DNA of 64,000 nt from Entomortierella parvispora E1425 (GCA_020891255.1 BQFW01000006.1:1984001-2048000); one strand, 5' to 3'. Shown: positions 75 to 18,830, counted from the stretch's first letter. Notes: a model not told the origin generated them from the sequence alone. Program-made: numbers and translations.

Positions 75-2384
<2,310 letters not shown>

Positions 2385-2414
2385 TGCTGCCGTCTATGTT
2401 TATTTTCTCCCCGA

Positions 2415-2444
2415 TCAGAAACCCGTTCCGGAACGGGTTTCTGA
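2415..2444. repeat. Perfect 30-bp palindrome tcagaaacccgttcc|ggaacgggtttctga
   Basis: The 15-nt left arm is the exact reverse complement of the right arm, with no spacer. Lies 30 nt after the PGM stop codon. Confidence 0.95.
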
Positions 2445-2549
2445 CCCATTCAAAAACCTGCATTGTAAATAAAAAAAAAATTGAGCTCTTCTTGCGTTCA
2501 TCTTGCGTCTACATCTTTCATTCATCTCATCAACAGCCGCATCAGCAAC

Positions 2550-4295
2550 ATGGAGGACTCAACACCCCTTTCAGTAGAAGCATCAGAGCTTCCAGGCTCG
2601 ACTACAGGACCACTCCAGGAGCAGGAAGCGCCCTCTGCGTCTCCAGCCTTGCTTTCTAGAGCCGCACCAGGTCCCCCCGCCTTCACCACAGGGCCTCAGG
2701 GGCAAGAAGGTCCTTCTCCACTAAAGATCCCCGAGCTCCTGACCCGAATTGGCCGATTCATGGATCAGCCAACCCTCCTGGCCTGTCAGCTTGTGTGCAA
2801 GGAATGGCACAAGACGCTCATGTTTTTGCCTTGGGCAGAATTAAAGCTCTTTCAAATGGGTCGGCACTTCAGACAACCCATGACAGAAGACTTTATCCGT
2901 CAGCATGCGCCTCTGGTCGAGCGACTCTCAATCCGAGTCGACCCACAGCATTATCAGCAAGTCAATGGAAACCTGCACGAGGAGCTCTGCCTCCGGACCA
3001 TTGACTTTCCAAAGCTCACGTCACTCGACATTGGGATCCAAAAGGGTGTGGCCTATCTTGACAGTCAGACAAGGGACATGGCGTATCTGACCTCCGAGTT
3101 GTTCAGGTTGATGTTGGAGAGCAGCTCAGCGCTCAACAACGGAGGACAGGGGTTGCCAATGCTCCAAGTGCTGAAAATCACTGATTTCCACTTCAAGTTC
3201 CTGCCTCGAGACTGGATGACCCTTTGGGAGACGCTTTGGTCCCGACTTCAGGTTCTTTCACTGATCGGTCTTTGGTGGGAGGAATACCAGGTCTTTCCAG
3301 AAGAAGATAACATGGATGATTCTGACGACGAGAACATGATGACACAGTGGAATAGACAAGATGAGCTGTGCGACCCTGAAAAGATGGAGGATTTAGCCAA
3401 GCGACTGGGGCCCTCCTTGACGATGCGGGAATTGACCCTGGTCAATCGCGGCTCACAGGAAAACTCTGCCCTGTATGCGATCCAAAAGTGGATGGTAGAA
3501 CAGTGTCCCAATGTTGTCCGATTGGAGTGGAGTGTCACCTGGAGGATACGATCAGATGAGAAGCCATTGGCCATGATGCGGGACCTCATCGTGAGCGGAC
3601 GTCAAGAGGACCCCCCACAGTTCCAGAAATTAGAGACCCTGGCTCTCCCGGCAAAGTTTAACGAAGACGAGTTTCTGGATCTGGCCAAAGCTATGCCACG
3701 TATGACGGAGCTGAACTTTTTCGGAACCAGACACTTTGACGGCAGCGCATGGCTTCTTTTCAAGATCGCGACACCCCACCATTTGAATACGATCCGGGTC
3801 GTCGATGTTAGCTGGTCTGGTTTGAACGCGATGGTGATGCTCGATATACTTTGCTCTCTTCCACGCTTGGAAGACTTCCGAGGCGATTATGTCGCGGACC
3901 GGGATCTGCAAAACGACCCTCGACCCTGGGCTTGCCGGAAAACGTTGAAGCGCCTGAGCCTGGACTTCAACATCACCTCCCAAAGGCGACTCCTCGCACA
4001 GCGTATGATCTTGGGTCGATTGGCGGAACTGGAACAGCTCGAGGATTTGATCGTCAGCGATTCTCATTTGCGTTTGGATCTGTCCAAGCCAAAGGGAATG
4101 CTGGAGAGCTTGAAGGCGCTCAAGAACTTGAAGAGACTCTCCTTGGGGACGCGACGCGAGCATTTCAATTGCGATTGGGGACTGGCCGAGATCGCCTGGG
4201 TCCGAGAGAACTGTCCAAAGTTGAAGTATGTGGATCGTGTCCATTACAAAGAGGAGGTGGGGGAGGAAGATCGGTTCCCTCCCGCTCCCCAGTAG
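2550..4295 (+). CDS. F-box/LRR (RNI-like) protein, array copy 1, 581 aa, intronless
   Basis: F-box-like PSPLKIPELLTRIGRFMDQPTLLACQLVCKEWH followed by LxxLxL repeats and the PWAC..LKRLSL motif. ATG chosen by homology with the other copies; the ORF track starts at an upstream TTG. Confidence 0.9.
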   Translation: MEDSTPLSVEASELPGSTTGPLQEQEAPSASPALLSRAAPGPPAFTTGPQGQEGPSPLKIPELLTRIGRFMDQPTLLACQLVCKEWHKTLMFLPWAELKLFQMGRHFRQPMTEDFIRQHAPLVERLSIRVDPQHYQQVNGNLHEELCLRTIDFPKLTSLDIGIQKGVAYLDSQTRDMAYLTSELFRLMLESSSALNNGGQGLPMLQVLKITDFHFKFLPRDWMTLWETLWSRLQVLSLIGLWWEEYQVFPEEDNMDDSDDENMMTQWNRQDELCDPEKMEDLAKRLGPSLTMRELTLVNRGSQENSALYAIQKWMVEQCPNVVRLEWSVTWRIRSDEKPLAMMRDLIVSGRQEDPPQFQKLETLALPAKFNEDEFLDLAKAMPRMTELNFFGTRHFDGSAWLLFKIATPHHLNTIRVVDVSWSGLNAMVMLDILCSLPRLEDFRGDYVADRDLQNDPRPWACRKTLKRLSLDFNITSQRRLLAQRMILGRLAELEQLEDLIVSDSHLRLDLSKPKGMLESLKALKNLKRLSLGTRREHFNCDWGLAEIAWVRENCPKLKYVDRVHYKEEVGEEDRFPPAPQ

Positions 4296-4473
4296 AGCAT
4301 TGCAGTAAGAAATCTATCTTTCCTCCTCCTCCTCCAGGGGATGAGGCCGATTTAGTCCCTGCGCGTTGACCTCACGTCAAAATCTAGCATTGGAATAAAA
4401 TCAATACATAAAATCACGCTCGTGTGCATCATTCATTTGCATCATTCATTTCTTTCCTTCATTCATCAGCATC

Positions 4474-6225
4474 ATGGAAGACGCAGCTCTACATTCAGGA
4501 GACGCATCAGGATCAGCATCCTCCACTACAGGACCCCAGAGGGAGGAGGCATCTTCGGCAGCCCTCGTTCTGTTCTCTAGCGCCGCACCAGGTCCCCCAC
4601 GTCTTTCCGCAGTTCTACGGGGATATGAAGACCCATCACCGCTCAATATCCCAGAGCTCCTGGCACGAATTGGACGATTCATGGACCTGCCCACCCTCCT
4701 GACCTCTCAGCTTGTGTGCAGGGAGTGGCACAAGGTACTTGACTGCTTGCGTTGGACAGAATTAAAGCTCGTTCAAATGGGTCGGCACTTCAAACAACCC
4801 ATGCCAGAAGACTTTATCCGCCGGCATGCGCCTCTGGTCCAGCGACTCTCGATTTGGGTCAACCGTCACCACTACCGACGAGTCGACGGAAACCTGCACA
4901 AAGAACTTTGTCTCCGGACCCTTGACTTTCCGAAGCTTATATCTCTCGAGATTTGCATTCGAAACGGTCCGTACTCTCGTGGTGACGAAATAAGGGACAT
5001 TCAGTTTCTGACCTCAGAATTGTTTAGGTTAATGTGGACGAGAAGTTCGACACTCGACTCAGGATACGGGTTTCCTATGCTTCAAGAGTTGAAGATTACT
5101 GATTTTCAATTCAAGTTTTTACCTCGAGACTGGATGGTCCTTTGGGAGAGGCTTTGGTCCCGCCTCCAGGTTCTTTCACTGACCGGCCCTTGGTGGGAAA
5201 ACCGCCAAGTCTTTCCAGAAGAGGACGGTACCAATGTTGTCAGCCAGGAGAGTCAAGGAAAAAGGTATGAAAAGATGTGTGACCCTGCCGAAATGGAAAA
5301 TCTTGCCAAACGACTGGGACCTTCCTCAACGATGCGGGATTTGACAATGGTTCAACACAGTGAGCCCGAGAACTCTGGCCTGTATCGGATGCAACAGTGG
5401 ATAGTGAGCCAATGCCCCAATATCGTCCGATTGAAATGGCGCATCGGCGGGACAGCGGTTCAGCATGGGAGGCCCACGCTAATGATTCGGGACCTCATCG
5501 TGAGGGGGAGTCGACTGAACCCCCCACAATTTCAGAACTTGGAAACCCTGGCTCTCCCCTTCGACATTGACCAAACCGAGTTTTTGGCCCTAGCCACTCT
5601 CATGCGGAGCTGGACGGAACTCAACATAAAAGGATCGCAGTTCTTTGATTGGTACACATGGTATTTGCTCAAGACAACCCTGCGGCATTTGAATACGCTC
5701 CGGGTCGTCAATGTTGCGTTCTGTTGTTTGAATGGAACGGATATTATCGATATGCTTTGCTCTCTGCCAAAGTTGGAAGTTTTCCGAGGAACTTTTATTA
5801 CGGATAAGGACCTGCTGGAGGACCCTAGGCCATGGGCTTGCAAGGAAACGCTGAAGCGCCTTTGCTTGCATCTCAACATGCCCCAGAGGCAACCCCGCTC
5901 CCAAAGTGTGATCATTGGTCGATTGGCCGAATTGGAACAACTCGAGTATTTGATCGTCCCCGATTGTTGTTTGATTTTGGATTTGTCCAAGCCAAACGGA
6001 GTGCTGGAGGGCTTGAAGACACTCAGGAACTTGAGGATACTCTCCTTGCAGATGCGACTCGAGAGCTACAGGTGCGACTGGGGCCTGGCGGAGATCGCGT
6101 GGGTCCGAGAGAATTGGCCAAATCTAAAGTATGCGGATTCTGTTCAATACAAAGTCGAAGTAGGGGAAGGGGACCGATTCCTTCGCAGCTATTATCGTGG
6201 ATTCAGTTCGGTGACCATTTCGTAA
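4474..6225 (+). CDS. F-box/LRR protein, array copy 2, 583 aa
   Basis: Collinear paralogue of copy 1 (PLNIPELLARIGRFMD...VCREWH; PWACKETLKRLCL; CDWGLAEIAWVRENWP). Confidence 0.9.
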   Translation: MEDAALHSGDASGSASSTTGPQREEASSAALVLFSSAAPGPPRLSAVLRGYEDPSPLNIPELLARIGRFMDLPTLLTSQLVCREWHKVLDCLRWTELKLVQMGRHFKQPMPEDFIRRHAPLVQRLSIWVNRHHYRRVDGNLHKELCLRTLDFPKLISLEICIRNGPYSRGDEIRDIQFLTSELFRLMWTRSSTLDSGYGFPMLQELKITDFQFKFLPRDWMVLWERLWSRLQVLSLTGPWWENRQVFPEEDGTNVVSQESQGKRYEKMCDPAEMENLAKRLGPSSTMRDLTMVQHSEPENSGLYRMQQWIVSQCPNIVRLKWRIGGTAVQHGRPTLMIRDLIVRGSRLNPPQFQNLETLALPFDIDQTEFLALATLMRSWTELNIKGSQFFDWYTWYLLKTTLRHLNTLRVVNVAFCCLNGTDIIDMLCSLPKLEVFRGTFITDKDLLEDPRPWACKETLKRLCLHLNMPQRQPRSQSVIIGRLAELEQLEYLIVPDCCLILDLSKPNGVLEGLKTLRNLRILSLQMRLESYRCDWGLAEIAWVRENWPNLKYADSVQYKVEVGEGDRFLRSYYRGFSSVTIS

Positions 6226-6395
6226 AGGGGTATCTGTCCTTCCCCGATGGGCATCATCAAAGTGTCGCAAAAATGTAGTGAAGGGGGTAATTGGAGCGGA
6301 AAATCTCGTCCAAATCGAGCAGGGAAATAAAGAAAAAAAAAAAAAATCAAGCACATGTGTCTTTCATCACATCTTCCATTGAACGCATCGAAATC

Positions 6396-8102
6396 ATGGA
6401 AGGCTCAGATCAGCATCCTGGAGAACCATCAGCATCTAAAAGAAGACTCCGGAGTCTTCGTTTTAGAAACGTACCAGGTCCCCCGCGCTCCACTCTAGGA
6501 GCTCCAGGGTACGAAGAATCCTCTCCGCTGAAGATCCCAGAGGTCCTGGTCCAGATTGGCGAGTACATGGATCAGGCCACCCTTTTGGCCTGTCAGCTTG
6601 TTTGTAAGGAATGGCACAGGACACTCAACCTCTTGCTTTGGAGAGACCTGAAGCTTGTTCAATTTGGCAACCAGTTCAAGTATCCCATGTCGGACGTCTG
6701 TATCGGCCTTCACGCACCCCTGGTCCAGAAACTCTCTCTACGGTTCGACACTCAACATTACCAACAAGTCAATGGAAATCTGAGCGACAATGTCTGTCTC
6801 CGGACGATTGACTTTCCAAAGCTCACTTCGCTAGAGATTGGTGTAAAGCGGTGCTGGTCCAGTACGGATACCCTGAAAGACGGCATGGAGTATCTGACCT
6901 CAGAATTGTTCAGGTTGATGTTGGAGAGCAGCTCTGCACTTAACAGCGGAGGGCAAGGACTCCGTATGCTCCAGGAGTTGAAGATCACCAATTTTCAATT
7001 CAGGTTCTTGCCTTCGGATTGGATCACCCTTTGGGAAACACTTTGGTCCCGACTTCAAGTTCTTTCATTAATCGGTCCTTGGTGGGATGTGTATCAGGTA
7101 TTTCCTGAAGAGGATGGCATTGACGTTTTCAGCGATGAGAGCAGGAGGAGAGCATTTGATCGGCACGCAGATCTTTTTAATTGGGAGGCGATGGATGAGT
7201 TGGCCGAGTGGCTTGAACCGTCCTCGACGATGCGGGATTTAACTATGGTTAACTACAACACAACGGAGAATGAAGGGTTGTATAGGCTTCAGAGGTGGAT
7301 GTTGAGGCAATCTCCCAATCTAGTCCGCTTGGATTGGCGTCTTGGCTGGAAACTTGATCCGATCGAAAGGCCAATGGAATTGCTGTGGGAGATCATCAGG
7401 AATGGGAGGCGCGAAACCCCCCCACGGTTTCAGGACCTGGAGACCATATCTCTCTCGCCAATGCTTGAAGAGGATGAGTTTGTGGATCTGATCAATGCCA
7501 TGCCGCGCTTAACGGAGATGAATATGGATTGCCTGAGAGACTTTGGGGACAGCGCATGGGGTTTGCTCAAGGCCGTGACACCACGCCATTTGGCGACGAT
7601 CCGGATCATGAAGGTTGATGCAACTGGCCTAAGTGCGGGCGCGTTGATCGATATATTGTGCTCTCTGCCAAACTTGGAAGTTTTCCGAGGAGATTATATT
7701 ACGGATCAGGACCTGCGAAAAGATCCTCGACCATGGGCCTGCCGGAGAACGCTCAAGAGCCTGGAACTGAATTTTGAGGTCACGTCCCGAAAACAAGTCC
7801 TTGCCCAGAAGCTGATTGTCAAGCGTTTGGCAGAATTGGAGCAGCTCGAGGAGTTGGACGTGAGCGATTCATATTTGCAGCTGGATCTATCGAAACCCAA
7901 AGGGCTATTGACGTCCTTGAGAACCCTCAAACACCTCAAGACATTCTCGATGGTGTCTCAGCTTGAGGATTTCAATTGCGATTGGGGGCTGGCCGAGATC
8001 GCGTGGGTCCGAGAGCACTTGCCAAAGTTGAAATACGTGGATTGGATCGAGTACAAAGATGAGGTGAGGGAGGAAGACAAATATCCTCCCATTCCTCGTT
8101 AG
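6396..8102 (+). CDS. F-box/LRR protein, array copy 3, 568 aa
   Basis: Collinear paralogue; ATG at 6396 follows the shared ...catcATGGA leader. Confidence 0.9.
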   Translation: MEGSDQHPGEPSASKRRLRSLRFRNVPGPPRSTLGAPGYEESSPLKIPEVLVQIGEYMDQATLLACQLVCKEWHRTLNLLLWRDLKLVQFGNQFKYPMSDVCIGLHAPLVQKLSLRFDTQHYQQVNGNLSDNVCLRTIDFPKLTSLEIGVKRCWSSTDTLKDGMEYLTSELFRLMLESSSALNSGGQGLRMLQELKITNFQFRFLPSDWITLWETLWSRLQVLSLIGPWWDVYQVFPEEDGIDVFSDESRRRAFDRHADLFNWEAMDELAEWLEPSSTMRDLTMVNYNTTENEGLYRLQRWMLRQSPNLVRLDWRLGWKLDPIERPMELLWEIIRNGRRETPPRFQDLETISLSPMLEEDEFVDLINAMPRLTEMNMDCLRDFGDSAWGLLKAVTPRHLATIRIMKVDATGLSAGALIDILCSLPNLEVFRGDYITDQDLRKDPRPWACRRTLKSLELNFEVTSRKQVLAQKLIVKRLAELEQLEELDVSDSYLQLDLSKPKGLLTSLRTLKHLKTFSMVSQLEDFNCDWGLAEIAWVREHLPKLKYVDWIEYKDEVREEDKYPPIPR

Positions 8103-8354
8103 AGCGCGACTAGACAGTGAACTTTCATTTCATAGAGAGTCATCCCATCCTCCTTCCCTGGGGATCTTCATAGTCTTTTTCAATGACAGGAGATGTGGCA
8201 GTGACAGACTGGAGGAAGAATAGTGGGGTTGCTCACTTCTGAGCACCCGTTGGTCTCAGACCCAGCATGGAAAATCAAAACAAAAGAAAAAAAAATCAGG
8301 CACATGTTTTGTTTGCATCTTTCATTCGTAACGTTCATTCGCCCCATCAGCATC

Positions 8355-10082
8355 ATGAAAGAACCAGCTCAGCTTTCAGGAAAGGCATCAAAGCTATCAA
8401 ACTCGACTACAGGACCCCAGCGGCAGGAGGCTCCCTTGCTATCGCCTGCCCGGTCCTCTAAAAACGCACCAGGTCCACCTGCTCTTACCACAGGGCTCAA
8501 GGGGTATGCGAGTCCCTCACCATTCGAGATCCCAGAGCTCCTGGTCCGCATTGGGGGATTCATGGATCAGTGTACCCTCCTGGTTTGTCGGCTAGTGTGC
8601 AAGGAATGGCTTAGGACGCTCGACTTCTTACTTTGGGAAGAACTACAACTCGTTCAACTTGTCAATCGATTCCAAGCACCTATGACGGACGATTTTGTTT
8701 GCCAGCATGCACCTTTCGTCCAGCGACTTTCGATCCACATCAAAGCAAACAAGAAAAGCGGAAGAAATATGAATGATCATCTCTGTCTCCGGACCATTGA
8801 CTTTCCAAAGCTCGCATCACTCGAGATCGGTATTCAAAGGGGCCAGCCTTATGTCGACTGGGCTTTGCACCTGGAGGATCTGTCCTCAGAGTTATTCAGG
8901 CTGATGTTGGAAAGCAGCTCAATGTTCAACAACGGAGGACACGGGCTTCCAGTGCTCCAAGTGCTGAAGATTACCGAATTCGGATTCAAGTTCTTGCCTC
9001 GGGACTGGATGACCCTTTGGGAGACGCTTTGGTCCCGGCTTCAGGTTCTTTCACTGATCGGTCCTTGGTGGGGGAAAGACGCCGTTTTCCCGGAAGAGGC
9101 AGACAAGGTGTTTTTCAGGGATGAGAGTGTGGATAGGCAATTGGACCGGCACGAGGAGCTGTGCAACAGGGATGAGATGCGAATGCTGGCCAGGCGACAT
9201 GGACCGTCTTGGACGATGCGGGATTTGACCATGATCTGTCACAATTCAGATAACGAGAGTGTTTACATGATTCAGGAATGGATGGTGGAACAGTGCCCCA
9301 ATTTAGTTCGGCTTGAATGGGATATGGGCTCTGGAGCCGATCAGATGGAAACGATACGGAACCTCATTTTAAAAGGGAGTCGGCTGGACCCCCCTCAGTT
9401 TCAGAACCTGGAGGCCCTGGCTGCCATGCCAGTTCATGCAGAGTTCGAGTTCATGGACATGATCCAGGCTATGCCGCGTTTGACAGAACTGGACCTGAAA
9501 TATATGCACGACTTTAAGGACAGCACATGGGATTTGCTGAAGGCTGAGACGCCGCGCCATTTGGCAACGATACGGATCCTGGATGTGACAAACTCGAGGT
9601 TTAGCTCGCCCACGTTGATCGATATGCTCTGCTCTCTACCAAACTTGGAGGTTTTCAGGGCACACTATATTACGGACGAGGACCTGTTGGATGACCCTCG
9701 ACCATGGGCCTGCCGCAAAACACTCAAGAATCTGTATCTGGATTTTGAGGTCTCTTCCGAAAGCCTAGTCGACGCCCGGAGTCTGGTTGTCAGTCGATTG
9801 GCGGAATTGGAGCAGCTGGAGGAGTTGCACGTGTGCAATTCATATTCGCTGTTGGATCTGTCCCTGCCCGAAGGACTCTTGACGGCTTTGAAACCCTCCA
9901 GGAACCTAAAGAAACTCACGCTGGAGTTTAGTCCAGAGTCCTCTTGCCCTTGGGGTCTGGCCGAGATCGCGTGGGTCAGAAAGAACTTTCCAAAACTGAA
10001 AAACGTTGGTGGTGTGAGTTACAAAGACGAAGTGAGAAGGGAGGATCAATTTGCTCCCATCCGTAGGCCGTGGTTCGCCTAG
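8355..10082 (+). CDS. F-box/LRR protein, array copy 4, 575 aa
   Basis: Collinear paralogue; ATG at 8355 after catcagcatc. Confidence 0.9.
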   Translation: MKEPAQLSGKASKLSNSTTGPQRQEAPLLSPARSSKNAPGPPALTTGLKGYASPSPFEIPELLVRIGGFMDQCTLLVCRLVCKEWLRTLDFLLWEELQLVQLVNRFQAPMTDDFVCQHAPFVQRLSIHIKANKKSGRNMNDHLCLRTIDFPKLASLEIGIQRGQPYVDWALHLEDLSSELFRLMLESSSMFNNGGHGLPVLQVLKITEFGFKFLPRDWMTLWETLWSRLQVLSLIGPWWGKDAVFPEEADKVFFRDESVDRQLDRHEELCNRDEMRMLARRHGPSWTMRDLTMICHNSDNESVYMIQEWMVEQCPNLVRLEWDMGSGADQMETIRNLILKGSRLDPPQFQNLEALAAMPVHAEFEFMDMIQAMPRLTELDLKYMHDFKDSTWDLLKAETPRHLATIRILDVTNSRFSSPTLIDMLCSLPNLEVFRAHYITDEDLLDDPRPWACRKTLKNLYLDFEVSSESLVDARSLVVSRLAELEQLEELHVCNSYSLLDLSLPEGLLTALKPSRNLKKLTLEFSPESSCPWGLAEIAWVRKNFPKLKNVGGVSYKDEVRREDQFAPIRRPWFA

Positions 10083-10263
10083 AAAAGGTGGTGAGCATCT
10101 CATAAAGAATATATTCTCTTCTTCGCCTCAGCATCTTCATGTTGTTGTTTGTAACAGGATAATTTCGTGCCTGTTCGAGCACGCGTTGGTCCCAGCAGCA
10201 CGAAAAATCAAAAAAATGTTTGTCATCTTTCGATTCATGACGTTCATTCATCACATCAGCATC

Positions 10264-10496
10264 ATGGAAGACCGAGTTCTAAATTCAGGAGAGGCATCAG
10301 AATCAACGACCTCTGCTACAGGATTCCTTGGACAGGGGGCTCACTCTGCATCTTTAACTCTGCCTTCTAGAACCGCACCAGGTCCACCTGCCGTTACTAC
10401 AGGGCCCCAGGGGTGTGAAGACCCATCACCACTCAAGATCCCAGAGGTCCTGGTCCGCACTGGGAGGGGGATCAGTACCTTCCCATTCCTTGTTAA
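10264..10496 (+). pseudogene. F-box/LRR array copy 5, internally deleted: N-terminal leader fused out of frame to the last ~10 codons
   Basis: MEDRVLNSGEAS...PSPLKIPEVLVRTG is directly followed by gag ggg gat cag tac ctt ccc att cct tgt taa (EGDQYLPIPC*), which matches the family C-terminus (copy 3 EEDKYPPIPR*, copy 6 EEDQFPPIPFD*). Confidence 0.85.
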
Positions 10497-10874
10497 GTCT
10501 TGGCCAGACAGTAGGGACGCCTTGACCTGTCGTCGTGAGAATAGTTGCAGTGAGAGGCTGTTTATGAGAATGCCGACTTTTGTCTTTTGCTTGGAATGCG
10601 CGTCTGTCTCGACCCTAGGATAGGCTCAGTCCCTAGATCGAAGGTAGCCCTCCTTCACTCAGTCAAGTCAATTGACCGATATCATTGGTTGCAAGCCAGC
10701 GGCCTTAACCTTGCAAAGACGTTTTTTTTCTCAGACTGTTCCTGGTCCTGGACCAGAACTCCCCGATTTGCGTGACTTCAAAAAAAAAAAAAAATAAAAA
10801 AAAAAAATAAAAAAGGTCTCTGCCAGCACTTTTTGTTTTCTTCGTCGACATCTTTCATTCACCACATCGGCATC

Positions 10875-12605
10875 ATGGAAGACTTGGCCCTACCATCAGG
10901 AGAAGCATCAGGATTGGCAGCCTCCTCTACTGGATCTCAAGGACAGGAGACTTCTCCATCCTCAGCTCTGCCCACTGGAACCGCACTAGGCACCTTGGTC
11001 CTCCCTACCGGGCCTCAGGGGTACAAAAATCCTTCACCACTACAGACGCCAGAGCTCCTTGCTCGCATTGGGAACTTTGTGGATCGGTCCACACTCTTGG
11101 CTTGTCAGGTAGTGTGTAAGGAATGGCACAGGACGCTCGAGCACCTGCTTTGGAAAGACCTGAAGCTCGTTCAACTTAACAATCATTTCCAAGAACCCAT
11201 GACCGACGACTGTATCCGCCGGCACGCGCCTTTGGTCCAGCGACTCTCGATCCGCGTCGACCCCCTGAATTATGAATTGTTCTTTGGAAACCTGGATGAC
11301 AATCTCTGTCTCCGGACCATTGACTTTCCACAGCTTACGTCGCTCGATATTGGTATCCAAAAGGGCAAGTCGTATTTGAGTAGCGAAACGATCGAGATGG
11401 AGTATCTGACCGCAGAGTTGTTCAGGTTGATGTTGGAAAGCAGCTCAGCGCTCAACAATGGCGGTCAAGGGCTTTCTAAGCTCCAGGTGTTGAAGATCAC
11501 TGGTTTCCAATTCAGGTTCGTGCCTCGGGACTGGGCAACTCTTTGGGGGACGCTTTGGTCCCGCCTCCAGGTTCTCTCTCTGATTGGAACTTGGTGGGCA
11601 CCTTACCAGGTCTTTTCAGAAGAGGATGGTCTTGATTACCATGGCCGTGAGAGACTATCTAGGCAGAGGGATTGGGTTCGGGAGCTGTGGACCTGCGACG
11701 AGACGGTGACTGCGATGAAGCGATTGGGACCCTCCTTGACAATGCGGGATTTGACCATGATTAACAAGGGCTCAAAGAACGAAGAACTGTATGGTATTCA
11801 AAAGTGGATAATCACTCAATGTCCCAAGCTTGTCCGATTGGAATGGTGCATGAGCTGGGACCCGGAGAAGGAAAGGCCGATGCAACTGATGTTACACCTC
11901 ATTGAAAGGGGGAGGAGAATGAACCCCCCACAATTCCAAGACCTACAGACCTTGGCTCTCCCGGGAGCATTTGACGAAATCGATTACTACTGTCTGCTCA
12001 AAGCCATGCCGCGCTTGACAGAGCTGCGAGGGTGGTGGGACTTTGATGACGGCCTCTGGGAATTGCTCAAGGTGGGGACACCGCGCCACTTGGAGACGAT
12101 CCGGCTTGTGGATATTTATGCCTGTAATCTGAGTTCGCGCACACTGATCGATTTGTTGTGCTCCTTACCGAACCTTGAAGTTCTTCGAGGAGACTGTATC
12201 ACGGATCGGGACCTGCGAGAGGATCCTCGACCATGGGCCTGTCGGGGAACTTTGAGGCGTCTTGAGTTGGATTTCAAAATCACGACCCAGAGGCGAGTCC
12301 TTTCCCAGAGTTTGATTGCCAGTCGGCTGGCTGAATTCGAGCAGCTAGAGGATTTGATCGTGGCCCATTCCCCTTTACGCCTGGATCTGTCCAAGTCTAA
12401 GGGGGTGCTAGAGAGGTTGAAGCCACTCAAGAACCTGAAGACACTCTCGCTCCATTCGCGTAACGCAAGCTTCAATTGCGATTGGGGCCAAGCAGAGTTA
12501 GCTTGGGTTCGAGAGAACTGGCCAAATTTGAAGTACGTGAGTTGGATCGAGTACAAAGATGAGGTGAGGGAGGAGGACCAATTCCCTCCCATTCCTTTTG
12601 ATTAG
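10875..12605 (+). CDS. F-box/LRR protein, array copy 6, 576 aa
   Basis: Collinear paralogue (PLQTPELLARIGNFVD...VCKEWH; PWACRGTLRRLEL). Confidence 0.9.
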   Translation: MEDLALPSGEASGLAASSTGSQGQETSPSSALPTGTALGTLVLPTGPQGYKNPSPLQTPELLARIGNFVDRSTLLACQVVCKEWHRTLEHLLWKDLKLVQLNNHFQEPMTDDCIRRHAPLVQRLSIRVDPLNYELFFGNLDDNLCLRTIDFPQLTSLDIGIQKGKSYLSSETIEMEYLTAELFRLMLESSSALNNGGQGLSKLQVLKITGFQFRFVPRDWATLWGTLWSRLQVLSLIGTWWAPYQVFSEEDGLDYHGRERLSRQRDWVRELWTCDETVTAMKRLGPSLTMRDLTMINKGSKNEELYGIQKWIITQCPKLVRLEWCMSWDPEKERPMQLMLHLIERGRRMNPPQFQDLQTLALPGAFDEIDYYCLLKAMPRLTELRGWWDFDDGLWELLKVGTPRHLETIRLVDIYACNLSSRTLIDLLCSLPNLEVLRGDCITDRDLREDPRPWACRGTLRRLELDFKITTQRRVLSQSLIASRLAEFEQLEDLIVAHSPLRLDLSKSKGVLERLKPLKNLKTLSLHSRNASFNCDWGQAELAWVRENWPNLKYVSWIEYKDEVREEDQFPPIPFD

Positions 12606-12769
12606 ATAGTGAACGTTTCATAAAATAAAGCAAGTTTTATCCCATCCTTCCCTTCCTGGATGTCTTGACATGTCGTATTGGCGGCTACAGTGAAAACTTT
12701 TATGAGAATGTCAACGTTTGTCAATTGCATAGGCCGCACGCTGGTAGTCTTCTGTCATGAACTAGCGAG

Positions 12770-13433
12770 AAACCTGGAAACCTTGGCTCTTCCACAATTA
12801 TTTCAAGGAGGAGAGTTTATGAGGTTGATCCGTGTCATGCCACGTTTGACGATGCTGAATGTGCACAACGCGACACACTTTGGCGATAGTATATGGTCCA
12901 TCATGAAGTGGTCAACACATCACATGAACACGCTCCGGATCTTGGATGTGCGATCCACCAGTGTTGACGCGCGCATGTTGATCGATATGCTCTGCTCTCT
13001 GCCCAACCTGGAAGTCTTCCGAGGAGATTCCATCACAGATCGGGACCTGCGAAAGGATTCTCGACCCTGGATTTGTCAAAGAACGCTAAGGCGTCTCGAG
13101 CTGGATTACGAAATCACGACCCAGAAGAAACTTGTCTCCCAGCGTCTGGTCATCAGTCGACTGGAGAAATTAGACCAGCTGGAGTATTTAATCATGGCCC
13201 AGTCTCGTTTGCCCCTGGATCTGTCCGAGCCGAACGGGATACTGGCTGGCTTGAAGACCCTCAGGCACCTCAAGGCACTCTCGCTCGAGTCGCAGGAATG
13301 GTATTTCAGTTGCAATTGGGGCCTGGCTGAGACCGCGTGGGTTCGAGAGAACTGGCCAAAGTTGAACTATGTCGACGGTGTTCAATACAAAGAGGAGGTG
13401 GGGGAAGGGGACCAATTCCCCAAGTCTCAATAA
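12770..13433 (+). pseudogene. F-box/LRR array copy 7, 5'-truncated (C-terminal LRRs only, no F-box)
   Basis: Homology begins abruptly at NLETLALP (~12770). Upstream sequence is spacer-like. The 3' part is intact to EEVGEGDQFPKSQ*. Confidence 0.8.
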
Positions 13434-13574
13434 GGACTCAATAGGGGCGATCATGCAAGAGGAGGAAGGCCTTGTCCATGCTTGGGACACGTATTGGTAC
13501 CATGTTGTCCTGAAAATGAAAATGAAATCCAGCATTGACATTCCTTCACATCTTTCCTTCACCACATCGACATC

Positions 13575-15353
13575 ATGGAAGAACCGGCTCTGCTGTTAGG
13601 AGCAGCATCAGGATTGACAACCTCTGCTACTGGATCTCAGGGTCAGGAGACTCCCTCTTTGTCGCCAGCTCTGCCCTCTGGAGGCATACCGGGCGCCTTA
13701 GCTCTCACTACCGTACCACAGGGGTACAAGAATCCTTCACCACTCGAGATCTCAGAGCTCCTGACCCGCATTGTGAGTCTTGTGGATCAGACCACCCTCT
13801 TGGCTTGTCAGGTAGTGTGTAAGGAATGGCGCAGGACGCTCGAGTTCTTGATTTGGAGAGACCTGAAGCTCGTTCAACTTGGCAATCGTTTCAAACAACC
13901 CATGACCGACAACTGTATCCGCCAGCACGCGCCTTTGGTCCAGCGGCTCTCGATCTGCGTCGACCCTCGGTATTATCAACCAAGCAGTGGGAATCTGGAC
14001 AATAATCTCTGTCTCCGGACCACTGATTTTCCAAAGCTTACGTCGCTCGAGATTGGGATCCAGCTTGGTTTACTCTATTGGAGTAGCCAGACCGAGGAAA
14101 TGGTGTATCTGACGTACAAGTTGTTCAGGTTGATGTTGGACAGCAGCTCTTTACTCAGTGGTGGAGGTCAAGGGTTTCCAATGCTTCAGGTGTTGAAGAT
14201 CGCCGACCTCCAATTCAAGTTCTTACCTCGCGAGTGGATGACCCTTTGGGAAACACTTTGGTCCCGCCTCCAAGTTCTTTCGTTGACTGGCCATTGGTGG
14301 GGATATTATCAAGTCTTTCCGGAAGAGGAGAATATGGACGACATTGATGATGATAGGCCATGGCAGAGATACGAGGAGTTGTGCAACAAGGACGAGATGC
14401 AAAAACTGGCCAGGAGACATGGACCGTCATGGACGATGCGGGACTTGACCCTTATCAGCTACAGTAGAGATATGAATAGAGGCGTGTACGAGATACAGAG
14501 CTGGATGGTGGGACAATGCCCTGATCTCGTTCGATTAAAATGGAGTGTCGACTGGTATCTGGAGGCGGAACAAAGGCCCATGGAGCTAATACGAGACCTC
14601 GTTATGGAGGGGAGTCAACTCAACCCACCTCAGTTCCAGGAGCTGGAAACCCTGGATCTTCCGCGGCAATTTTACGGGGAAGAGTTTGTGGACCTGATCG
14701 ATGCCATGCCACGTTTGACGATGCTGAAAATGGAGGACGTAAAAGAGTTTGAGGAAAACCCATGGATCTTGCTGAAGGCCACAGCACCACGCCATTTGAA
14801 TACGCTCCGGATCCTGGATGTGCGATGCTCGGGTGTGGGCTCGCACACGTTGATCGATATGCTCTGTTCTCTGCCCAACCTGGAGGTCTTCCAAGGAGAT
14901 ACTATTACGGATCTGCACCTGAGAGAGGATCCTCGACCATGGGCCTGTCGGGGAGCTTTAAGGCGTCTTGAGTTGGATTTCAAAATCACGACCCAGAGGC
15001 GAGTCCTTTCCCAGAGTTTGATTGTCAGTCGGTTGGCCGAAATGGAGCAACTGGAGGATTTGAGAGTGTCCTGTTCCCCTTTGCGCCTGGATCTGTCCAA
15101 GCCAAAGGGGATGCTGGAGAGGTTAAAGACGCTCAAGCACCTGAAGACACTCTCACTCGAGTCGCGTAACGAAAACTTCAATTGCGATTGGGGCCAAGTA
15201 GAGTTGGCTTGGGTCCGAGAGAACTGGCCAAAATTGAAGTACGTGGATTGGATCGAGTACAAAGATGAGGTGAAGGAGGAGGACAAATTCCCTCGCACCC
15301 CTCCGGTTGAGGAGCAAAAAAGTGAACGTTATTACACAAGCCGAAACAAATAA
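13575..15353 (+). CDS. F-box/LRR protein, array copy 8, 592 aa
   Basis: Collinear paralogue with a short C-terminal extension. Confidence 0.9.
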   Translation: MEEPALLLGAASGLTTSATGSQGQETPSLSPALPSGGIPGALALTTVPQGYKNPSPLEISELLTRIVSLVDQTTLLACQVVCKEWRRTLEFLIWRDLKLVQLGNRFKQPMTDNCIRQHAPLVQRLSICVDPRYYQPSSGNLDNNLCLRTTDFPKLTSLEIGIQLGLLYWSSQTEEMVYLTYKLFRLMLDSSSLLSGGGQGFPMLQVLKIADLQFKFLPREWMTLWETLWSRLQVLSLTGHWWGYYQVFPEEENMDDIDDDRPWQRYEELCNKDEMQKLARRHGPSWTMRDLTLISYSRDMNRGVYEIQSWMVGQCPDLVRLKWSVDWYLEAEQRPMELIRDLVMEGSQLNPPQFQELETLDLPRQFYGEEFVDLIDAMPRLTMLKMEDVKEFEENPWILLKATAPRHLNTLRILDVRCSGVGSHTLIDMLCSLPNLEVFQGDTITDLHLREDPRPWACRGALRRLELDFKITTQRRVLSQSLIVSRLAEMEQLEDLRVSCSPLRLDLSKPKGMLERLKTLKHLKTLSLESRNENFNCDWGQVELAWVRENWPKLKYVDWIEYKDEVKEEDKFPRTPPVEEQKSERYYTSRNK

Positions 15354-15516
15354 AAAAAAAACATGTAATTGGAGTGAAGGAGCTACCCTCGAAGAGTTGG
15401 ATGAGGCCATTGATTCTGGGGCGCGATCGCGTCTGTCATACTCTAGAGATCAAGGTATTGTATTTATTACGAACGACGACTCTCCTGTTTTCTAAGGATT
15501 TTTCTTTCAATTTTTT

Positions 15517-16899
15517 TTACAGTCTAGCCTTGACAACAGTCGAACCCTGAGCATAGGATCGGATGTTCATGCCTTTCTTGGTCCGCGTGATATGGATCCG
15601 GTGCTTATGTCCTGGCGTCACCTTCAAGGAATGTTCCTCGTCGCCAGGCAAGATCCCACTCAAATGCAGTCCCTTTTCATCCTGTGACTCCAGCGCAAAC
15701 TCGGGCATGATGGTCAAAATCTCTCGGCCCTGGAAATGTGCCACCAGATCCTCATGGCGTTGGATGGGCAACAGATGTGCCAAGGTGACAAACTGAGGGG
15801 GCAAAAAGGTCTGAATCTCATTGTTGCGATACGCTTCAATCGCCTCCTCGGGTGTGTGCCAGTCCAGTCGTGTCGTCTCGGTGCCGTCCGCAAACACGCG
15901 CGAGTCTGAAAAGGAGTCTCGCGACCAAGGAAGCACTGTCAGGTAGAAGTGGGTATGGAATCGCTTGGCCTCAACTGGGGGTGTGATCCAAGAGGAGAAG
16001 TGGCAGAGACGGCCGACCGCAGGCTTGAGGTTGTGGGTGATGCACAGGTTGTAGAACTCTTCGGCGTTGTTGTGTACCTAATGAATGAGGGCGGAGAGAA
16101 TGCTTGTGAGACGAGGGCTCATTGGATCTCTGCAATTTCGCTATCTACTCCCTTACCTTCTCGCGCCAGATCCTGATCTCATGGTTTGAAAGCTCGGTAG
16201 GAGGATCAGACACAAGAACACCAGACTCCTCAAAGGCCTCGCGAATGGCGCAGATCTCGCTGAACAGGGGAGGGGCGTCTGGTTTGGGCGTGTAGTTCAG
16301 GAGAGTGGCCCATCGAGGATCATGATCTGCTTTCTCCACGTTGCCTCCTACATGTTTGCATTTGGATATCATGTTAGTCAGAGCAGGGGTGAACAAGGGA
16401 AAGAGGAAAGAGAAGCAAGAGGCAGTACCAGGAAAGACGTGCGCGCTGGCAGCGGTGCCTTTGCGACTGCGTTGAAGGAGTAGGATTTTGTAGTTGGCTT
16501 TTCCAGGCTGCACCTTGGACTTTGAAATGGGGGCAGCGATAATAAGCGAAGACGAGGGTCGAAGCTGTGCCCTTTCCTCAGCCGTTATTTGGGCTAGCAA
16601 AGAAGTATGGGCAATATTCAGTTAGGTGCGGCTCGAGAAGACAAAAAGAGTGAAACGGCAATTAGAAGCTTACACATGGTGGTGTATCGAGATTGTTGTT
16701 GAAAGTGGATGCGATTGTTGGGGGGATGAACCACTGATGTACAGTTGGACCGTTGGAGCTGCAGGCGACTGTGGGGTGATGGAGTTCTGACGGATGGCTT
16801 GAGGGTTGTCAACGAATGAGAAGAGAAGAGTCGGATGGTCCTGGATGAAAGATTCCCCAATCGCTCTCGGGTCGAGGAGGCGAGCGCAATCTTCAGCAT
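15517..16899 (-). CDS. NUDT19: NUDT19-like Nudix hydrolase (acyl-CoA diphosphatase type); exons 16899(or 16677)-16674, 16593-16429, 16347-16157, 16077-15517
   Basis: Motifs RPSSSLII, ILLLQR...HVFPGG, Nudix box ICAIREAFEESGV, WITPPVEAKRFHTHFY and DGTET...W.TP. C-terminal ARL* is a PTS1. Confidence 0.85.
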
Positions 16900-17122
16900 G
16901 GACGGGAGGTGGTGGTCACTCGGCTCGCTCAAGTGTTTGTGGAGAAAATAAAGAGACAAAGAGGAAAATTGCTTCCAGGTGTGGAAAGTCGCATTCCTTG
17001 CTCCTGCTGCAGGTCGCGAGGTCGCCCACTAGTTCCTAGTGGAGGGGAGCTCAAACACACACCATTCGCCAATTTTCTAAATGGGGGGACAGTCGTGGGA
17101 ATATCGGACAGTGAACATCCAG

Positions 17123-18737: not shown

Positions 18738-18824
18738 GGTCCTGCAGCATGGGTCAAAGGGAATGAGATGCAAAGCGCGACTCCTTGTTGCCACCATTTT
18801 CTTTTTTTTTTTTCGTGACTGTTG

Positions 18825-18830
18825 ACGCGT
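18825..18830. promoter_or_regulatory. MCB-like element ACGCGT about 90 bp upstream of the RAD51D start
   Basis: Exact ACGCGT. MCB elements drive G1/S and DNA-repair genes in ascomycete yeasts, but a single hexamer can occur by chance. Confidence 0.25.

What the first reader, a model, noticed from the sequence alone, without database searches (positions are those of the whole stretch)
2550..15353. Eight-copy, intronless, birth-and-death F-box/LRR array: candidate diversifying recognition system
Seen: eight head-to-tail paralogues between PGM and NUDT19, six intact and two broken. None has an intron, while every neighbouring housekeeping gene does. Established: F-box/LRR proteins are SCF substrate receptors, and rapidly evolving clustered F-box families in nematodes and plants have been linked to pathogen defence and to S-RNase self-incompatibility. 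Mortierellaceae often carry endohyphal bacteria. Inference: this may be a repertoire of intracellular receptors that target foreign proteins (endosymbiont, viral or non-self) for ubiquitination.
Basis: partly seen in the sequence, partly recalled or inferred. Interest (0 to 1): 0.8.

Follow-up and report, generated by a model that had tools for sequence, protein, structure and literature searches.

The report
Tandem F-box/LRR gene array in Entomortierella
A soil fungus carries eight head-to-tail copies (six intact, two remnants) of an intronless F-box/LRR ubiquitin-ligase adaptor gene that duplicated within its own lineage and is changing fastest on the loops likely to bind targets; what those targets are is unknown.

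Summary
Between phosphoglucomutase and a Nudix gene lie six uninterrupted ORFs of 569-592 codons and two remnants, all on the + strand. They are 53-65% identical in protein.

The genome is Entomortierella parvispora E1425, the host of the endobacterium Mycoavidus sp. B2-EB.

A confident model (pLDDT 82.5) and profile searches place the proteins in the F-box/LRR (FBXL) class, alongside FBXL2, TIR1, COI1 and Skp2.

The array is lineage-specific:
- Four other Mortierellaceae have PGM followed by bestrophin and no array.
- Gryganskiella has three or four distant copies beside PGM.
- A syntenic metagenome relative has one frameshifted copy, fragments and a degenerate PGM piece.
- No copy has a one-to-one orthologue.

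My own codon site models favour positive selection. M1a-M2a gives 2ΔlnL 21.2, against a maximum of 7.4 in 48 null simulations. The signal sits in the C-terminal LRRs. Nine of 14 candidate sites fall just after LRR β-strands.

A run that behaves like the RNA-seq library covers c4 and c6 but not remnant B, and c8 only weakly.

The proposed role in recognising foreign proteins remains untested.

The scan has already noted many similar arrays elsewhere in this genome, so this locus is one example of a genome-wide expansion.

The parts
1035..2384 (+). Last exon of phosphoglucomutase, the left boundary of the array
   Evidence: Pfam PGM domains II-IV and PGM1_C at E 1e-51. 100% identical to E. parvispora PGM.
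2550..4295 (+). c1, intact F-box/LRR copy (581 aa)
   Evidence: Uninterrupted ORF. F-box-like 20.2 bits. Sister to c2. Annotated in the database only as a 5'-truncated 479-aa protein, P0003.
4474..6225 (+). c2, intact copy (583 aa) with the longest branch and a divergent C-terminal tail
6396..8102 (+). c3, intact copy (568 aa from the ATG)
   Evidence: F-box-like 32.9 bits, above the Pfam cut-off of 24.3..
8355..10082 (+). c4, intact copy (575 aa)
   Evidence: Run X2 covers 9400-10037 at depth 43.
10264..10500 (+). Remnant A: first 65 codons of a copy fused to the last ~12 codons and the 3' flank of a copy (internal deletion of about aa 66-565)
   Evidence: tblastn aa 1-65. Alignment of 10461-10620 with the c6 stop region and its flank. 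Lies on the same X2 contig as c6.
10875..12605 (+). c6, intact copy (576 aa)
   Evidence: F-box-like 24.5 bits. Identical to annotated protein P0002. X2 contig 10265-12571 at depth 35 with no gaps.
12768..13433 (+). Remnant B: 5'-truncated copy (aa 355-575) with an open frame and no F-box
   Evidence: X2 depth is 0 over 12600-13199 and at most 1.95 over 13200-13599, while the DNA run X1 stays at 81-89.
13575..15353 (+). c8, intact copy (592 aa). Its F-box has Ser in place of the conserved Pro (ISELL).
   Evidence: Identical to P0001. Only one near-exact X2 piece (14104-14232, depth 3.4).
13740..13859 (+). F-box helices of c8 (aa 56-95); the equivalent segment is present in every intact copy
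   Evidence: Pfam PF12937/PF00646 matches. Three helices at pLDDT about 92. Family profile aligns to the FBXL2 F-box. Mean posterior omega 0.46.
13860..15260 (+). LRR solenoid of c8 (aa 96-562), about 16 beta-strand/helix turns
   Evidence: Model pLDDT 82.5, pTM 0.83. Foldseek matches TIR1, COI1, D3, FBXL2, FBXL3 and FBXL17.
14823..14828 (+). Codons 417-418 of c8, the two sites with posterior above 0.95 for omega > 1, directly after LRR strand 413-415
   Evidence: alignment columns SADTYR and WFANAC, P 0.99 and 0.97.
2468..2549 (+). Example of the conserved upstream unit: an A-run followed by a CATCTTTCATTCA…CATCAGCA(A/T)C leader ending at the ATG. It recurs before c2, c3, c4, remnant A, c6 and c8.
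   Evidence: Intergenic sequences printed. An X2 loose end with an adapter abutting CCTTCATT suggests a transcript start about 20 nt before an ATG (inference).
15517..16600 (-).
   Evidence: Nudix box in ORF 16145-16600. Pfam NUDIX only E 0.04. The flank 15462-19940 is 76% identical to metagenome contig L008 4690-9211.

Best explanation
The interval holds a lineage-specific tandem family of FBXL-type F-box/LRR proteins in Entomortierella parvispora E1425.

Likely mechanism. Each intact copy probably acts as an interchangeable substrate receptor of an SCF (Skp1-Cul1-F-box) ubiquitin ligase. The N-terminal F-box would dock on Skp1, and the LRR horseshoe of about 16 turns would bind a substrate that is then ubiquitinated.

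How the array grew. It grew by unequal crossing-over of whole units (core promoter, leader and intronless CDS) after this lineage split from its nearest sampled relatives. It loses copies by internal deletion and truncation.

Selection. About 55% of codons are under purifying selection, which keeps the scaffold. A small class of codons (4-8%) is under positive selection. These codons are concentrated in the C-terminal LRRs, in the loop that follows each β-strand. The paralogues are therefore diverging in what they bind.

Shown here: architecture, homology, duplication history, the selection pattern and (probably) transcription of c4 and c6.

Inferred: Skp1 binding, ubiquitination, and that the selected loops form the binding surface.

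The substrates, endogenous or foreign, are unknown.
For: Architecture:
- Pfam F-box-like in all six intact copies at 18.8-32.9 bits; two reach the cut-off.
- The 104-sequence family profile hits FBXL2 (2.5e-20, including the F-box), TIR1 (5.8e-19), FBXL3, FBXL17 and Skp2.
- The AF2 model has pLDDT 82.5. Its full-length Foldseek matches are TIR1, COI1, D3, FBXL2 and FBXL3.

Evolution:
- The seven alignable window copies (six intact plus remnant B) are monophyletic (100/100). They are sister to the PGM-adjacent Gryganskiella copies.
- The copies of a syntenic metagenome relative fall outside the window clade (93/95).
- Four other Mortierellaceae have PGM followed by bestrophin and no array.
- Neighbouring copies are each other's closest kin.
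- Remnants exist here. The relative has a frameshifted copy and a degenerate PGM piece.

Selection:
- M0 omega is 0.44. Under M1a, 57% of sites have omega 0.15.
- LRTs: M1a-M2a 21.2, M7-M8 36.9, M8a-M8 22.0.
- The 48 null simulations reach at most 7.4.
- The result survives trimming near gaps (22.9) and partition-specific topologies (17.85 in the last third).
- Nine of 14 candidate sites lie within 5 residues after LRR strands (Fisher 1e-4).

Expression: run X2 behaves like the RNA-seq library. It covers c4 at depth 43 and remnant A plus c6 at depth 35. It has nothing over most of remnant B and only about 3 on c8.
Against: - No biochemical evidence: Skp1 binding and substrates are untested.
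- Four of the six F-box matches fall below Pfam's gathering score.
- c8 lacks the conserved F-box proline.
- The site models are my own implementation, run on only six old paralogues (tree length about 4.8 substitutions per codon).
- The middle third has an incongruent topology, which implies past recombination. Recombination can inflate such tests.
- Only two sites exceed 0.95, and these are naive posteriors.
- The loop enrichment was defined after seeing the sites.
- I had no 3D coordinates to show that the sites cluster on one face.
- X2 is labelled 'DNA?'. I read it as RNA from its adapter-tipped contigs, gene-wise depth and total size.
Confidence: 0.75

Rival explanations
1. Immune-like surveillance repertoire. 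The paralogues would be intracellular receptors that recognise foreign proteins, such as Mycoavidus effectors, mycovirus proteins or non-self proteins after hyphal fusion. They would send those proteins to the proteasome, and an arms race would drive the turnover.
For: - Positive selection on recurring LRR loop positions.
- Lineage-specific turnover with pseudogenes.
- The host strain naturally carries an endobacterium.
- The family is hugely expanded in this genome and in Gryganskiella.
- An earlier scan note reports F-box genes beside NLR genes elsewhere in the genome (unchecked by me).
Against: - No target is known.
- No expression data with versus without the bacterium. c4 and c6 appear to be expressed in the cured line.
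- The paralogues are old (dS 0.6-1.1) rather than recently churning.
- No NLR, RNase or effector-like partner was found among the large ORFs of the window.
- Positive selection among paralogues is equally expected from ordinary neofunctionalisation.
- Within-species presence/absence variation is unresolved (run X3).
Confidence: 0.13
2. Ordinary regulatory expansion. This would be a lineage-specific set of SCF adaptors for endogenous substrates in development, nutrient or stress signalling, like the F-box expansions reported in mushroom-forming fungi. The positive-selection signal would reflect subfunctionalisation after duplication.
For: - F-box expansions with fast loss of orthology are described in Agaricomycetes (PMC10282164).
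- Most codons are constrained.
- c4 and c6 appear expressed in plain vegetative culture.
- Each unit carries the same conserved promoter and leader.
Against: - It does not by itself explain why selected sites recur at the same loop position of successive repeats, although it is compatible with that.
- No substrate is known.
- The scale of the expansion in two related species, and its absence at this locus in four others, hints at a lineage-specific pressure.
Confidence: 0.55
3. Decaying or neutral gene family. The copies would be largely functionless duplicates drifting towards pseudogenes, and the omega > 1 class would be an artefact of relaxed constraint, misalignment or recombination.
For: - Overall omega is high (0.44).
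- About 40% of codons fit omega = 1.
- Two remnants here and a frameshifted copy in the relative.
- c8 has an altered F-box and little coverage in X2.
- The middle third has a mosaic topology.
Against: - Six ORFs of about 580 codons stay open across dS of 0.6-1.1.
- 55-57% of codons have omega about 0.15.
- 18 positions that are at least 90% conserved across the 104-sequence family alignment are listed, and the 15 of them I checked against the alignment blocks are kept in all six copies.
- The LRT exceeds every one of the 48 null simulations, and it survives gap trimming and partition-specific trees.
Confidence: 0.1

Closest known systems
FBXL-class F-box proteins (human FBXL2, FBXL3, FBXL17 and Skp2; plant TIR1, COI1 and MAX2/D3; yeast Grr1)
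   Same: N-terminal three-helix F-box followed by an LRR horseshoe of similar length. The family profile hits FBXL2 at 2.5e-20 and TIR1 at 5.8e-19. Full-length fold matches at E 1e-9 to 1e-7.
   Different: Only 10-16% identical. There is a disordered Pro/Gly/Ser-rich N-terminus of about 55 aa. TM scores are only 0.4-0.5, so the curvature differs. No orthology to any characterised member. The genes are intronless and tandemly arrayed.
Expanded, positively selected F-box families of nematodes and plants (Thomas 2006, Genome Res, from my own knowledge; cited in PMC3984280)
   Same: Clustered lineage-specific duplicates with pseudogenes and a conserved F-box. Positive selection is confined to the substrate-binding domain.
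   Different: Those families mostly use FTH/FBA, kelch or other domains. This one is in a mucoromycote fungus and uses LRRs. The proposed link to pathogen defence is itself an inference in those systems.
S-locus F-box (SLF/SFB) arrays of Solanaceae and Rosaceae
   Same: Several tandem F-box paralogues at one locus that collectively recognise a diverse set of targets.
   Different: SLF genes have FBA domains and are linked to an S-RNase. No RNase gene was seen among the ORFs of at least 220 aa in this window. No mating or incompatibility context is known here.
F-box, BTB and RING expansions in Agaricomycetes (Krizsán 2019, as summarised in PMC10282164)
   Same: Large fungal expansions of ubiquitin-ligase adaptors that evolve so fast that orthology is lost.
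   Different: A different phylum. Those expansions are linked to fruiting-body development. I found no report for Mortierellaceae in the searchable literature.
Fungal NLRs (NACHT or NB-ARC with WD40/ANK/TPR repeats)
   Same: Intracellular repeat-based proteins with hypervariable repeat positions and birth-and-death dynamics.
   Different: These copies have no nucleotide-binding domain and no effector domain other than the F-box. The output would be ubiquitination, not oligomerisation.

Membership tests
F-box protein (SCF substrate receptor) | F-box motif of about 40-50 aa (Pfam PF00646/PF12937) with the L/I-P-x-E-I/L-L … L-x-x-V-C-K-x-W pattern | tested here: met
   PF12937 is found in all six intact copies at 18.8-32.9 bits; c3 and c6 exceed the cut-off of 24.3. 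The family profile aligns over the FBXL2 F-box. The model shows three helices at pLDDT about 92. c8 has Ser for the Pro, and c6 has TPELL.
F-box protein (SCF substrate receptor) | Binds Skp1 and assembles with Cul1/Rbx1 | not testable with these tools
   Needs co-IP, yeast two-hybrid or a multimer model.
FBXL subclass | C-terminal leucine-rich-repeat solenoid | tested here: met
   About 16 strand/helix turns over aa 96-562. Foldseek matches TIR1, COI1, D3, FBXL2, FBXL3 and FBXL17 over 510-690 columns. Pfam LRR models alone stay below threshold.
Birth-and-death multigene family | Tandem duplicates with pseudogenes or remnants in the array | tested here: met
   Remnant A is internally deleted and remnant B is 5'-truncated. 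The syntenic relative L008 carries a frameshifted copy and fragments.
Birth-and-death multigene family | Species-specific clades and variable copy number at the locus; no one-to-one orthologues | tested here: met
   Trees. At this locus there are 0 copies in E. beljakovae, M. alpina, L. hyalina and Lobosporangium. Gryganskiella has 3-4. E. parvispora has 8.
Birth-and-death multigene family | No ongoing homogenisation by gene conversion | tested here: met
   dS is 0.57-1.17. The highest 150-nt window identity is 0.92. The middle third does have an older mosaic topology.
Diversifying recognition (immune-like) repertoire | Positive selection focused on the ligand-binding surface | tested here: inconclusive
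   The LRTs are significant and calibrated, and sites recur after LRR strands. But there are only six sequences, the code is my own, posteriors are naive, and no 3D mapping or known ligand is available.
Diversifying recognition (immune-like) repertoire | Presence/absence or allelic hypervariability among isolates of one species | tested here: inconclusive
   Run X3 has the same species label and a different sample. It yields 62 contigs, mostly under 90% identical, stacked up to 6-7 deep. Its best matches are c6 at about 92% and c8 at about 88%. Contigs are too short to reconstruct the locus.
Diversifying recognition (immune-like) repertoire | Foreign target, or induction on challenge | not testable with these tools
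   No RNA run was listed. The sequenced line was cured of the endobacterium.
S-locus-type F-box system | Tight linkage to a partner gene such as an S-RNase | tested here: inconclusive
   Pfam on ten ORFs of the window (nine of at least 220 aa plus one 133-aa stretch) found no RNase. Small or intron-split genes were not examined.

The most novel reading that the evidence does not exclude
This array would be one unit of a genome-wide fungal surveillance system. More than a hundred intronless F-box/LRR genes are noted elsewhere in the same genome. Their diversifying LRR receptors would capture endobacterial, viral or non-self proteins and mark them for proteasomal destruction. That would be an innate-immunity layer based on ubiquitination, distinct from NLRs, and it might govern whether Mycoavidus endosymbionts are tolerated.
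Probability: 0.12. Interest if true: 0.85.

Novelty: new member of a known kind. Interest (0 to 1): 0.45.

Why it matters
Fungal innate immunity is usually discussed in terms of NLRs and HET domains. A large, fast-turning family of SCF adaptors under positive selection on its repeat loops, in a fungus that naturally hosts an endobacterium, offers concrete candidates for how early-diverging fungi police or tolerate intracellular partners.

If the substrates turn out to be endogenous, the locus still matters. I found no report of an F-box expansion in Mortierellaceae in the searchable literature. The locus also has a clear history: one ancestral gene beside PGM grew to eight copies here, while the syntenic relative has different copies and pseudogenes.

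The value of this single locus is limited, because the scan has already flagged many similar arrays in the same genome.

Tried and rejected
- RNA evidence. A search for RNA runs holding c8 listed none. I had to rely on run X2, labelled 'DNA?'. I read it as RNA-seq from its adapter-tipped contigs, gene-wise depth and 24-Mb total.
- More clade members. The word-based protein search found only the window's own proteins.
- E. chlamydospora synteny. Both contigs end about 1 kb after PGM, so they say nothing.
- Retroposition as the origin of intronlessness. The long A-run after remnant A looked like a poly(A) relic. However, an A-run of at least 7 bases (homopolymers) precedes the leader of c1, c3, c4, remnant A and c6, so it looks like a promoter-proximal feature. 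c2 and c8 have only A-rich sequence there. The Gryganskiella relatives are intronless too. Rejected as specific evidence.
- Recent gene conversion. No long high-identity tracts. Only an older mosaic signal in the middle third.
- NLR or other partner genes beside the array. None among the large ORFs.
- Horizontal origin. GC is 0.49-0.53, the same as the surroundings, and the relatives are fungal. Rejected.
- Antisense ORFs of 110-208 aa inside the copies. I treated these as by-products of the coding strand and did not pursue them.
- One script call did nothing, and one (59) timed out from thread contention. It was rerun.
Full report
OBSERVATION

The + strand between 2550 and 15353 carries six long uninterrupted ORFs and two shorter related pieces.
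- c1 2550-4295
- c2 4474-6225
- c3 6396-8102
- c4 8355-10082
- c6 10875-12605
- c8 13575-15353

The six are 53-65% identical in protein and 67-75% in DNA. tblastn finds no further close copy in the 64-kb window. It finds only a weak F-box match near 29.5 kb.

The two 'broken' copies differ in kind.
- Remnant A (10264-10458) keeps the first 65 codons. It then runs directly into sequence that aligns with the last dozen codons and the 3' flank of c6. It is therefore an internal deletion.
- Remnant B (12768-13433) is the last 221 codons of a copy with the frame still open.

The left neighbour is phosphoglucomutase. The right neighbour has a Nudix box, but its Pfam support is weak. Both neighbours are split into several ORFs. 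The array copies are not.

The intergenic spacers are only 141-252 bp, apart from the 416 bp that include the tail of remnant A. Before c1, c3, c4, remnant A and c6 the spacer ends in the same unit: an A-run followed by a CATCTTTCATTCA…CATCAGCATC leader abutting the ATG. c2 and c8 keep the leader but have only A-rich sequence in place of the A-run. The duplicated unit is thus promoter plus CDS.

ORGANISM

The PGM exon is 100% identical to the PGM of Entomortierella parvispora on a 2.44-Mb contig. The genome paper (PMC8759367) describes strain E1425 as the natural host of the endobacterium Mycoavidus sp. B2-EB. DNA and RNA were taken from a line cured of the bacterium.

WHAT THE PROTEINS ARE

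- Pfam finds an F-box-like domain near residue 60 in all six intact copies. Scores are 18.8-32.9 bits against a cut-off of 24.3. LRR models stay below threshold.
- An exhaustive profile search found 1063 relatives at E ≤ 0.001 and 72 at E ≤ 1e-30.
- With 104 of these relatives as the alignment, AlphaFold2 gave a confident model of c8 (pLDDT 82.5, pTM 0.83). It has a disordered N-terminus of about 55 residues, three F-box helices (60-95) and about 16 strand/helix turns up to residue 562.
- Foldseek aligns the whole model to TIR1, COI1, D3/MAX2, FBXL2, FBXL3 and FBXL17.
- The family profile hits FBXL2 (2.5e-20, F-box included), TIR1 (5.8e-19) and Skp2 (8.6e-8) by sequence alone.
- The protein-atlas look-up returns Mucoromycota 'F-box domain-containing protein' clusters.

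Membership of the FBXL class is therefore met for both sequence-defined features. Skp1 binding could not be tested. c8 has Ser where the conserved F-box Pro sits.

HISTORY OF THE LOCUS

Other Mortierellaceae. In E. beljakovae, Mortierella alpina, Linnemannia hyalina and Lobosporangium transversale, PGM is followed by a bestrophin gene and there is no F-box gene.

Gryganskiella cystojenkinii. Here PGM is followed by a polX gene and then by three tandem intronless relatives, 27-31% identical to the window copies, plus a fourth gene of 589 aa.

Family tree. In a 33-protein tree the seven alignable window copies (six intact plus remnant B) form one clade (100/100) on a long stem. That clade is sister (90/73) to the clade holding the two PGM-adjacent Gryganskiella genes.

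A syntenic metagenome relative. A 12.2-kb soil-metagenome contig (L008, seen again in an ENA assembly) lines up with the window's right flank: its 4690-9211 is 76% identical to window 15462-19940. Directly before that flank it has a single copy split over three reading frames. Before that copy it has a degenerate, frameshifted piece of the PGM 3' end (42-54% aa identity, against 84-91% for true orthologues). Before that it has more fragments and the end of another copy. Its copies fall inside the E. parvispora clade's parent node (100/100) but outside the window clade (93/95).

Conclusion on history.
- No window copy has a one-to-one orthologue, even in a relative that shares the flank.
- The eight copies arose after that split.
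- Copy number and integrity at this locus differ among all relatives examined.
- Within the array, neighbours are closest kin: (c1,c2), (c3,c4) and (c6,c8, with remnant B). This is what unequal crossing-over produces.
- dS of 0.57-1.17 and the absence of long high-identity tracts show that the burst is old and that the copies are not being homogenised now.
- The middle third of the gene gives a conflicting topology with a better likelihood, so some past exchange did occur.

SELECTION

Pairwise dN/dS is 0.27-0.45. codeml is not available, so I wrote GY94/F3x4 site models with joint optimisation of the nine branch lengths on the ML tree.

Main results:
- M0 gives omega 0.44.
- M1a puts 57% of codons at omega 0.15.
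- M2a adds 4.4% of codons at omega 4.2 (2ΔlnL 21.2, p 2.5e-5).
- M7 versus M8 gives 36.9, and M8a versus M8 gives 22.0.

Controls:
- Forty-eight data sets simulated under the fitted M1a gave a maximum LRT of 7.4, with 2 of 48 above 5.99. The code is therefore calibrated.
- Removing all codons within five of a gap, together with the disordered ends, leaves the LRT at 22.9.
- The signal lies in the C-terminal half (23.3, against 1.7 in the N-terminal half).
- With each third given its own topology, the LRTs are 2.7, 7.95 and 17.85.

Candidate sites:
- Naive posteriors exceed 0.95 at c8 residues 417 and 418, and exceed 0.8 at 16 sites in all.
- Nine of the 14 sites in the LRR region lie within five residues after a β-strand. 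These are residues 166, 244, 298/299, 328, 365, 387 and 417/418. Such positions make up 18% of the region (Fisher 1e-4).
- Mean posterior omega there is 0.97, against 0.53 elsewhere.
- I defined this class after seeing the sites, so it is exploratory. It does agree with another first-stage note on this window (s1-185212).
- The F-box itself is constrained (0.46).

Caveats: six sequences, high divergence, evidence of past recombination, and no 3D coordinates to confirm that the sites share one face.

EXPRESSION AND OTHER ISOLATES

No RNA run was listed for c8. I laid four runs on 9400-15399, which is 6,000 letters.

X1 (same sample as the assembly) has even depth of 73-83 on its exactly matching contigs. 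It is the DNA library.

X2 (same sample, labelled 'DNA?') has the following features:
- 24 Mb of contigs, and Illumina adapters at contig tips;
- depth 43 on c4;
- one gap-free 2307-nt contig from 10265 to 12571 (remnant A plus c6) at depth 35;
- zero over 12600-13199 and at most 1.95 over 13200-13599, which covers remnant B, while X1 stays at 81-89;
- only a depth-3 piece on c8.

I read X2 as the RNA-seq library. On that reading c4 and c6 are transcribed in vegetative mycelium of the cured line, remnant B is silent, and c8 is nearly so. Remnant A may form part of a long c6 leader or be a separate overlapping transcript. X2 also held 88% of the sampled words of 2400-8200, so c1-c3 are probably transcribed as well.

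X3 is another sample with the same species label. It gives 62 contigs, mostly below 90% identity and stacked six or seven deep on conserved parts. Its best matches are about 92% (c6) and about 88% (c8). That isolate has its own multi-copy set, but short contigs cannot show its arrangement.

CONTEXT IN THE GENOME AND THE LITERATURE

The top hits of the exhaustive search are mostly Gryganskiella cystojenkinii proteins from many contigs. There are also two further E. parvispora proteins and more distant Haplosporangium and E. lignicola members.

The scan's own notes list 123 entries on F-box/LRR genes in this genome, including several other 'birth-and-death' arrays and a follow-up on F-box genes beside NLR genes. 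I did not check those. They do show that this locus is one instance of a genome-wide expansion that the scan has already met on other DNA.

I found no paper on F-box expansion in Mortierellaceae. Comparable expansions are described for Agaricomycetes (PMC10282164). From my own knowledge they are also described for nematodes and plants (Thomas 2006, cited in papers found).

VERDICT

The evolutionary part of the interpretation (an F-box/LRR family, birth-and-death turnover, diversifying selection) is supported by new evidence.

The most likely mechanism is a set of interchangeable SCF substrate receptors whose binding loops are diverging. I give the immune-like reading about one chance in eight.

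As a kind of system this is a new member of a known class (expanded, positively selected F-box adaptor families), in a lineage where it has not been described.

Noticed in passing
window 26747-29754 (-): A 765-aa ORF shares the family's C-terminal motif (hhalign probability 94.8%, E 4.9e-8). An F-box-like stretch lies just upstream (tblastn 29512-29754). It is probably a distant, dispersed member of the same superfamily, possibly with an intron.
   Followed up: partly
L008 2344-2791: The metagenome relative carries a degenerate, frameshifted copy of the last 164 codons of PGM inside its array (42-54% aa identity). This is a footprint of a segmental duplication that included the end of PGM and the first F-box copy.
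   Followed up: partly
window 10265-12571: One gap-free contig of run X2 joins remnant A to c6. The c6 mRNA may therefore start at the remnant's promoter and carry a 610-nt leader with a 120-codon upstream ORF. Alternatively, two transcripts overlap.
   Followed up: no
window 13749-13766 (c8 residues 59-64): c8 has ISELL where the other copies have IPELL or TPELL. The proline is the most conserved F-box residue. c8 is also the copy with almost no coverage in run X2.
   Followed up: partly
alignment codons 184-366 (c8 residues 201-390): The middle third of the gene supports (c4,c8) instead of (c6,c8), with 8.8 lnL units in favour. This indicates an old exchange between non-adjacent copies.
   Followed up: partly
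window 1035-2384 versus L001, L002, L004: E. parvispora PGM is closer to Gryganskiella (91-92% on the pieces) and Podila (90-91%) than to E. chlamydospora or E. beljakovae (83-88%). The array is also shared with Gryganskiella only. The genus placement of E. parvispora may deserve a second look. This rests on a single gene.
   Followed up: no
window 22371-26327 (+) and 56457-60875 (-): Two very long ORFs. The 1318-aa one has no Pfam family at E ≤ 0.001. The 1472-aa one has only a weak WbqC-like match (34.6 bits) and a sub-threshold Apolipoprotein match (22.4 bits against a cut-off of 90).
   Followed up: no
L002 and L003 (E. chlamydospora): Both assemblies of this species break about 1 kb after PGM, at the place where the array begins in E. 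parvispora. This may reflect a repeat there.
   Followed up: no
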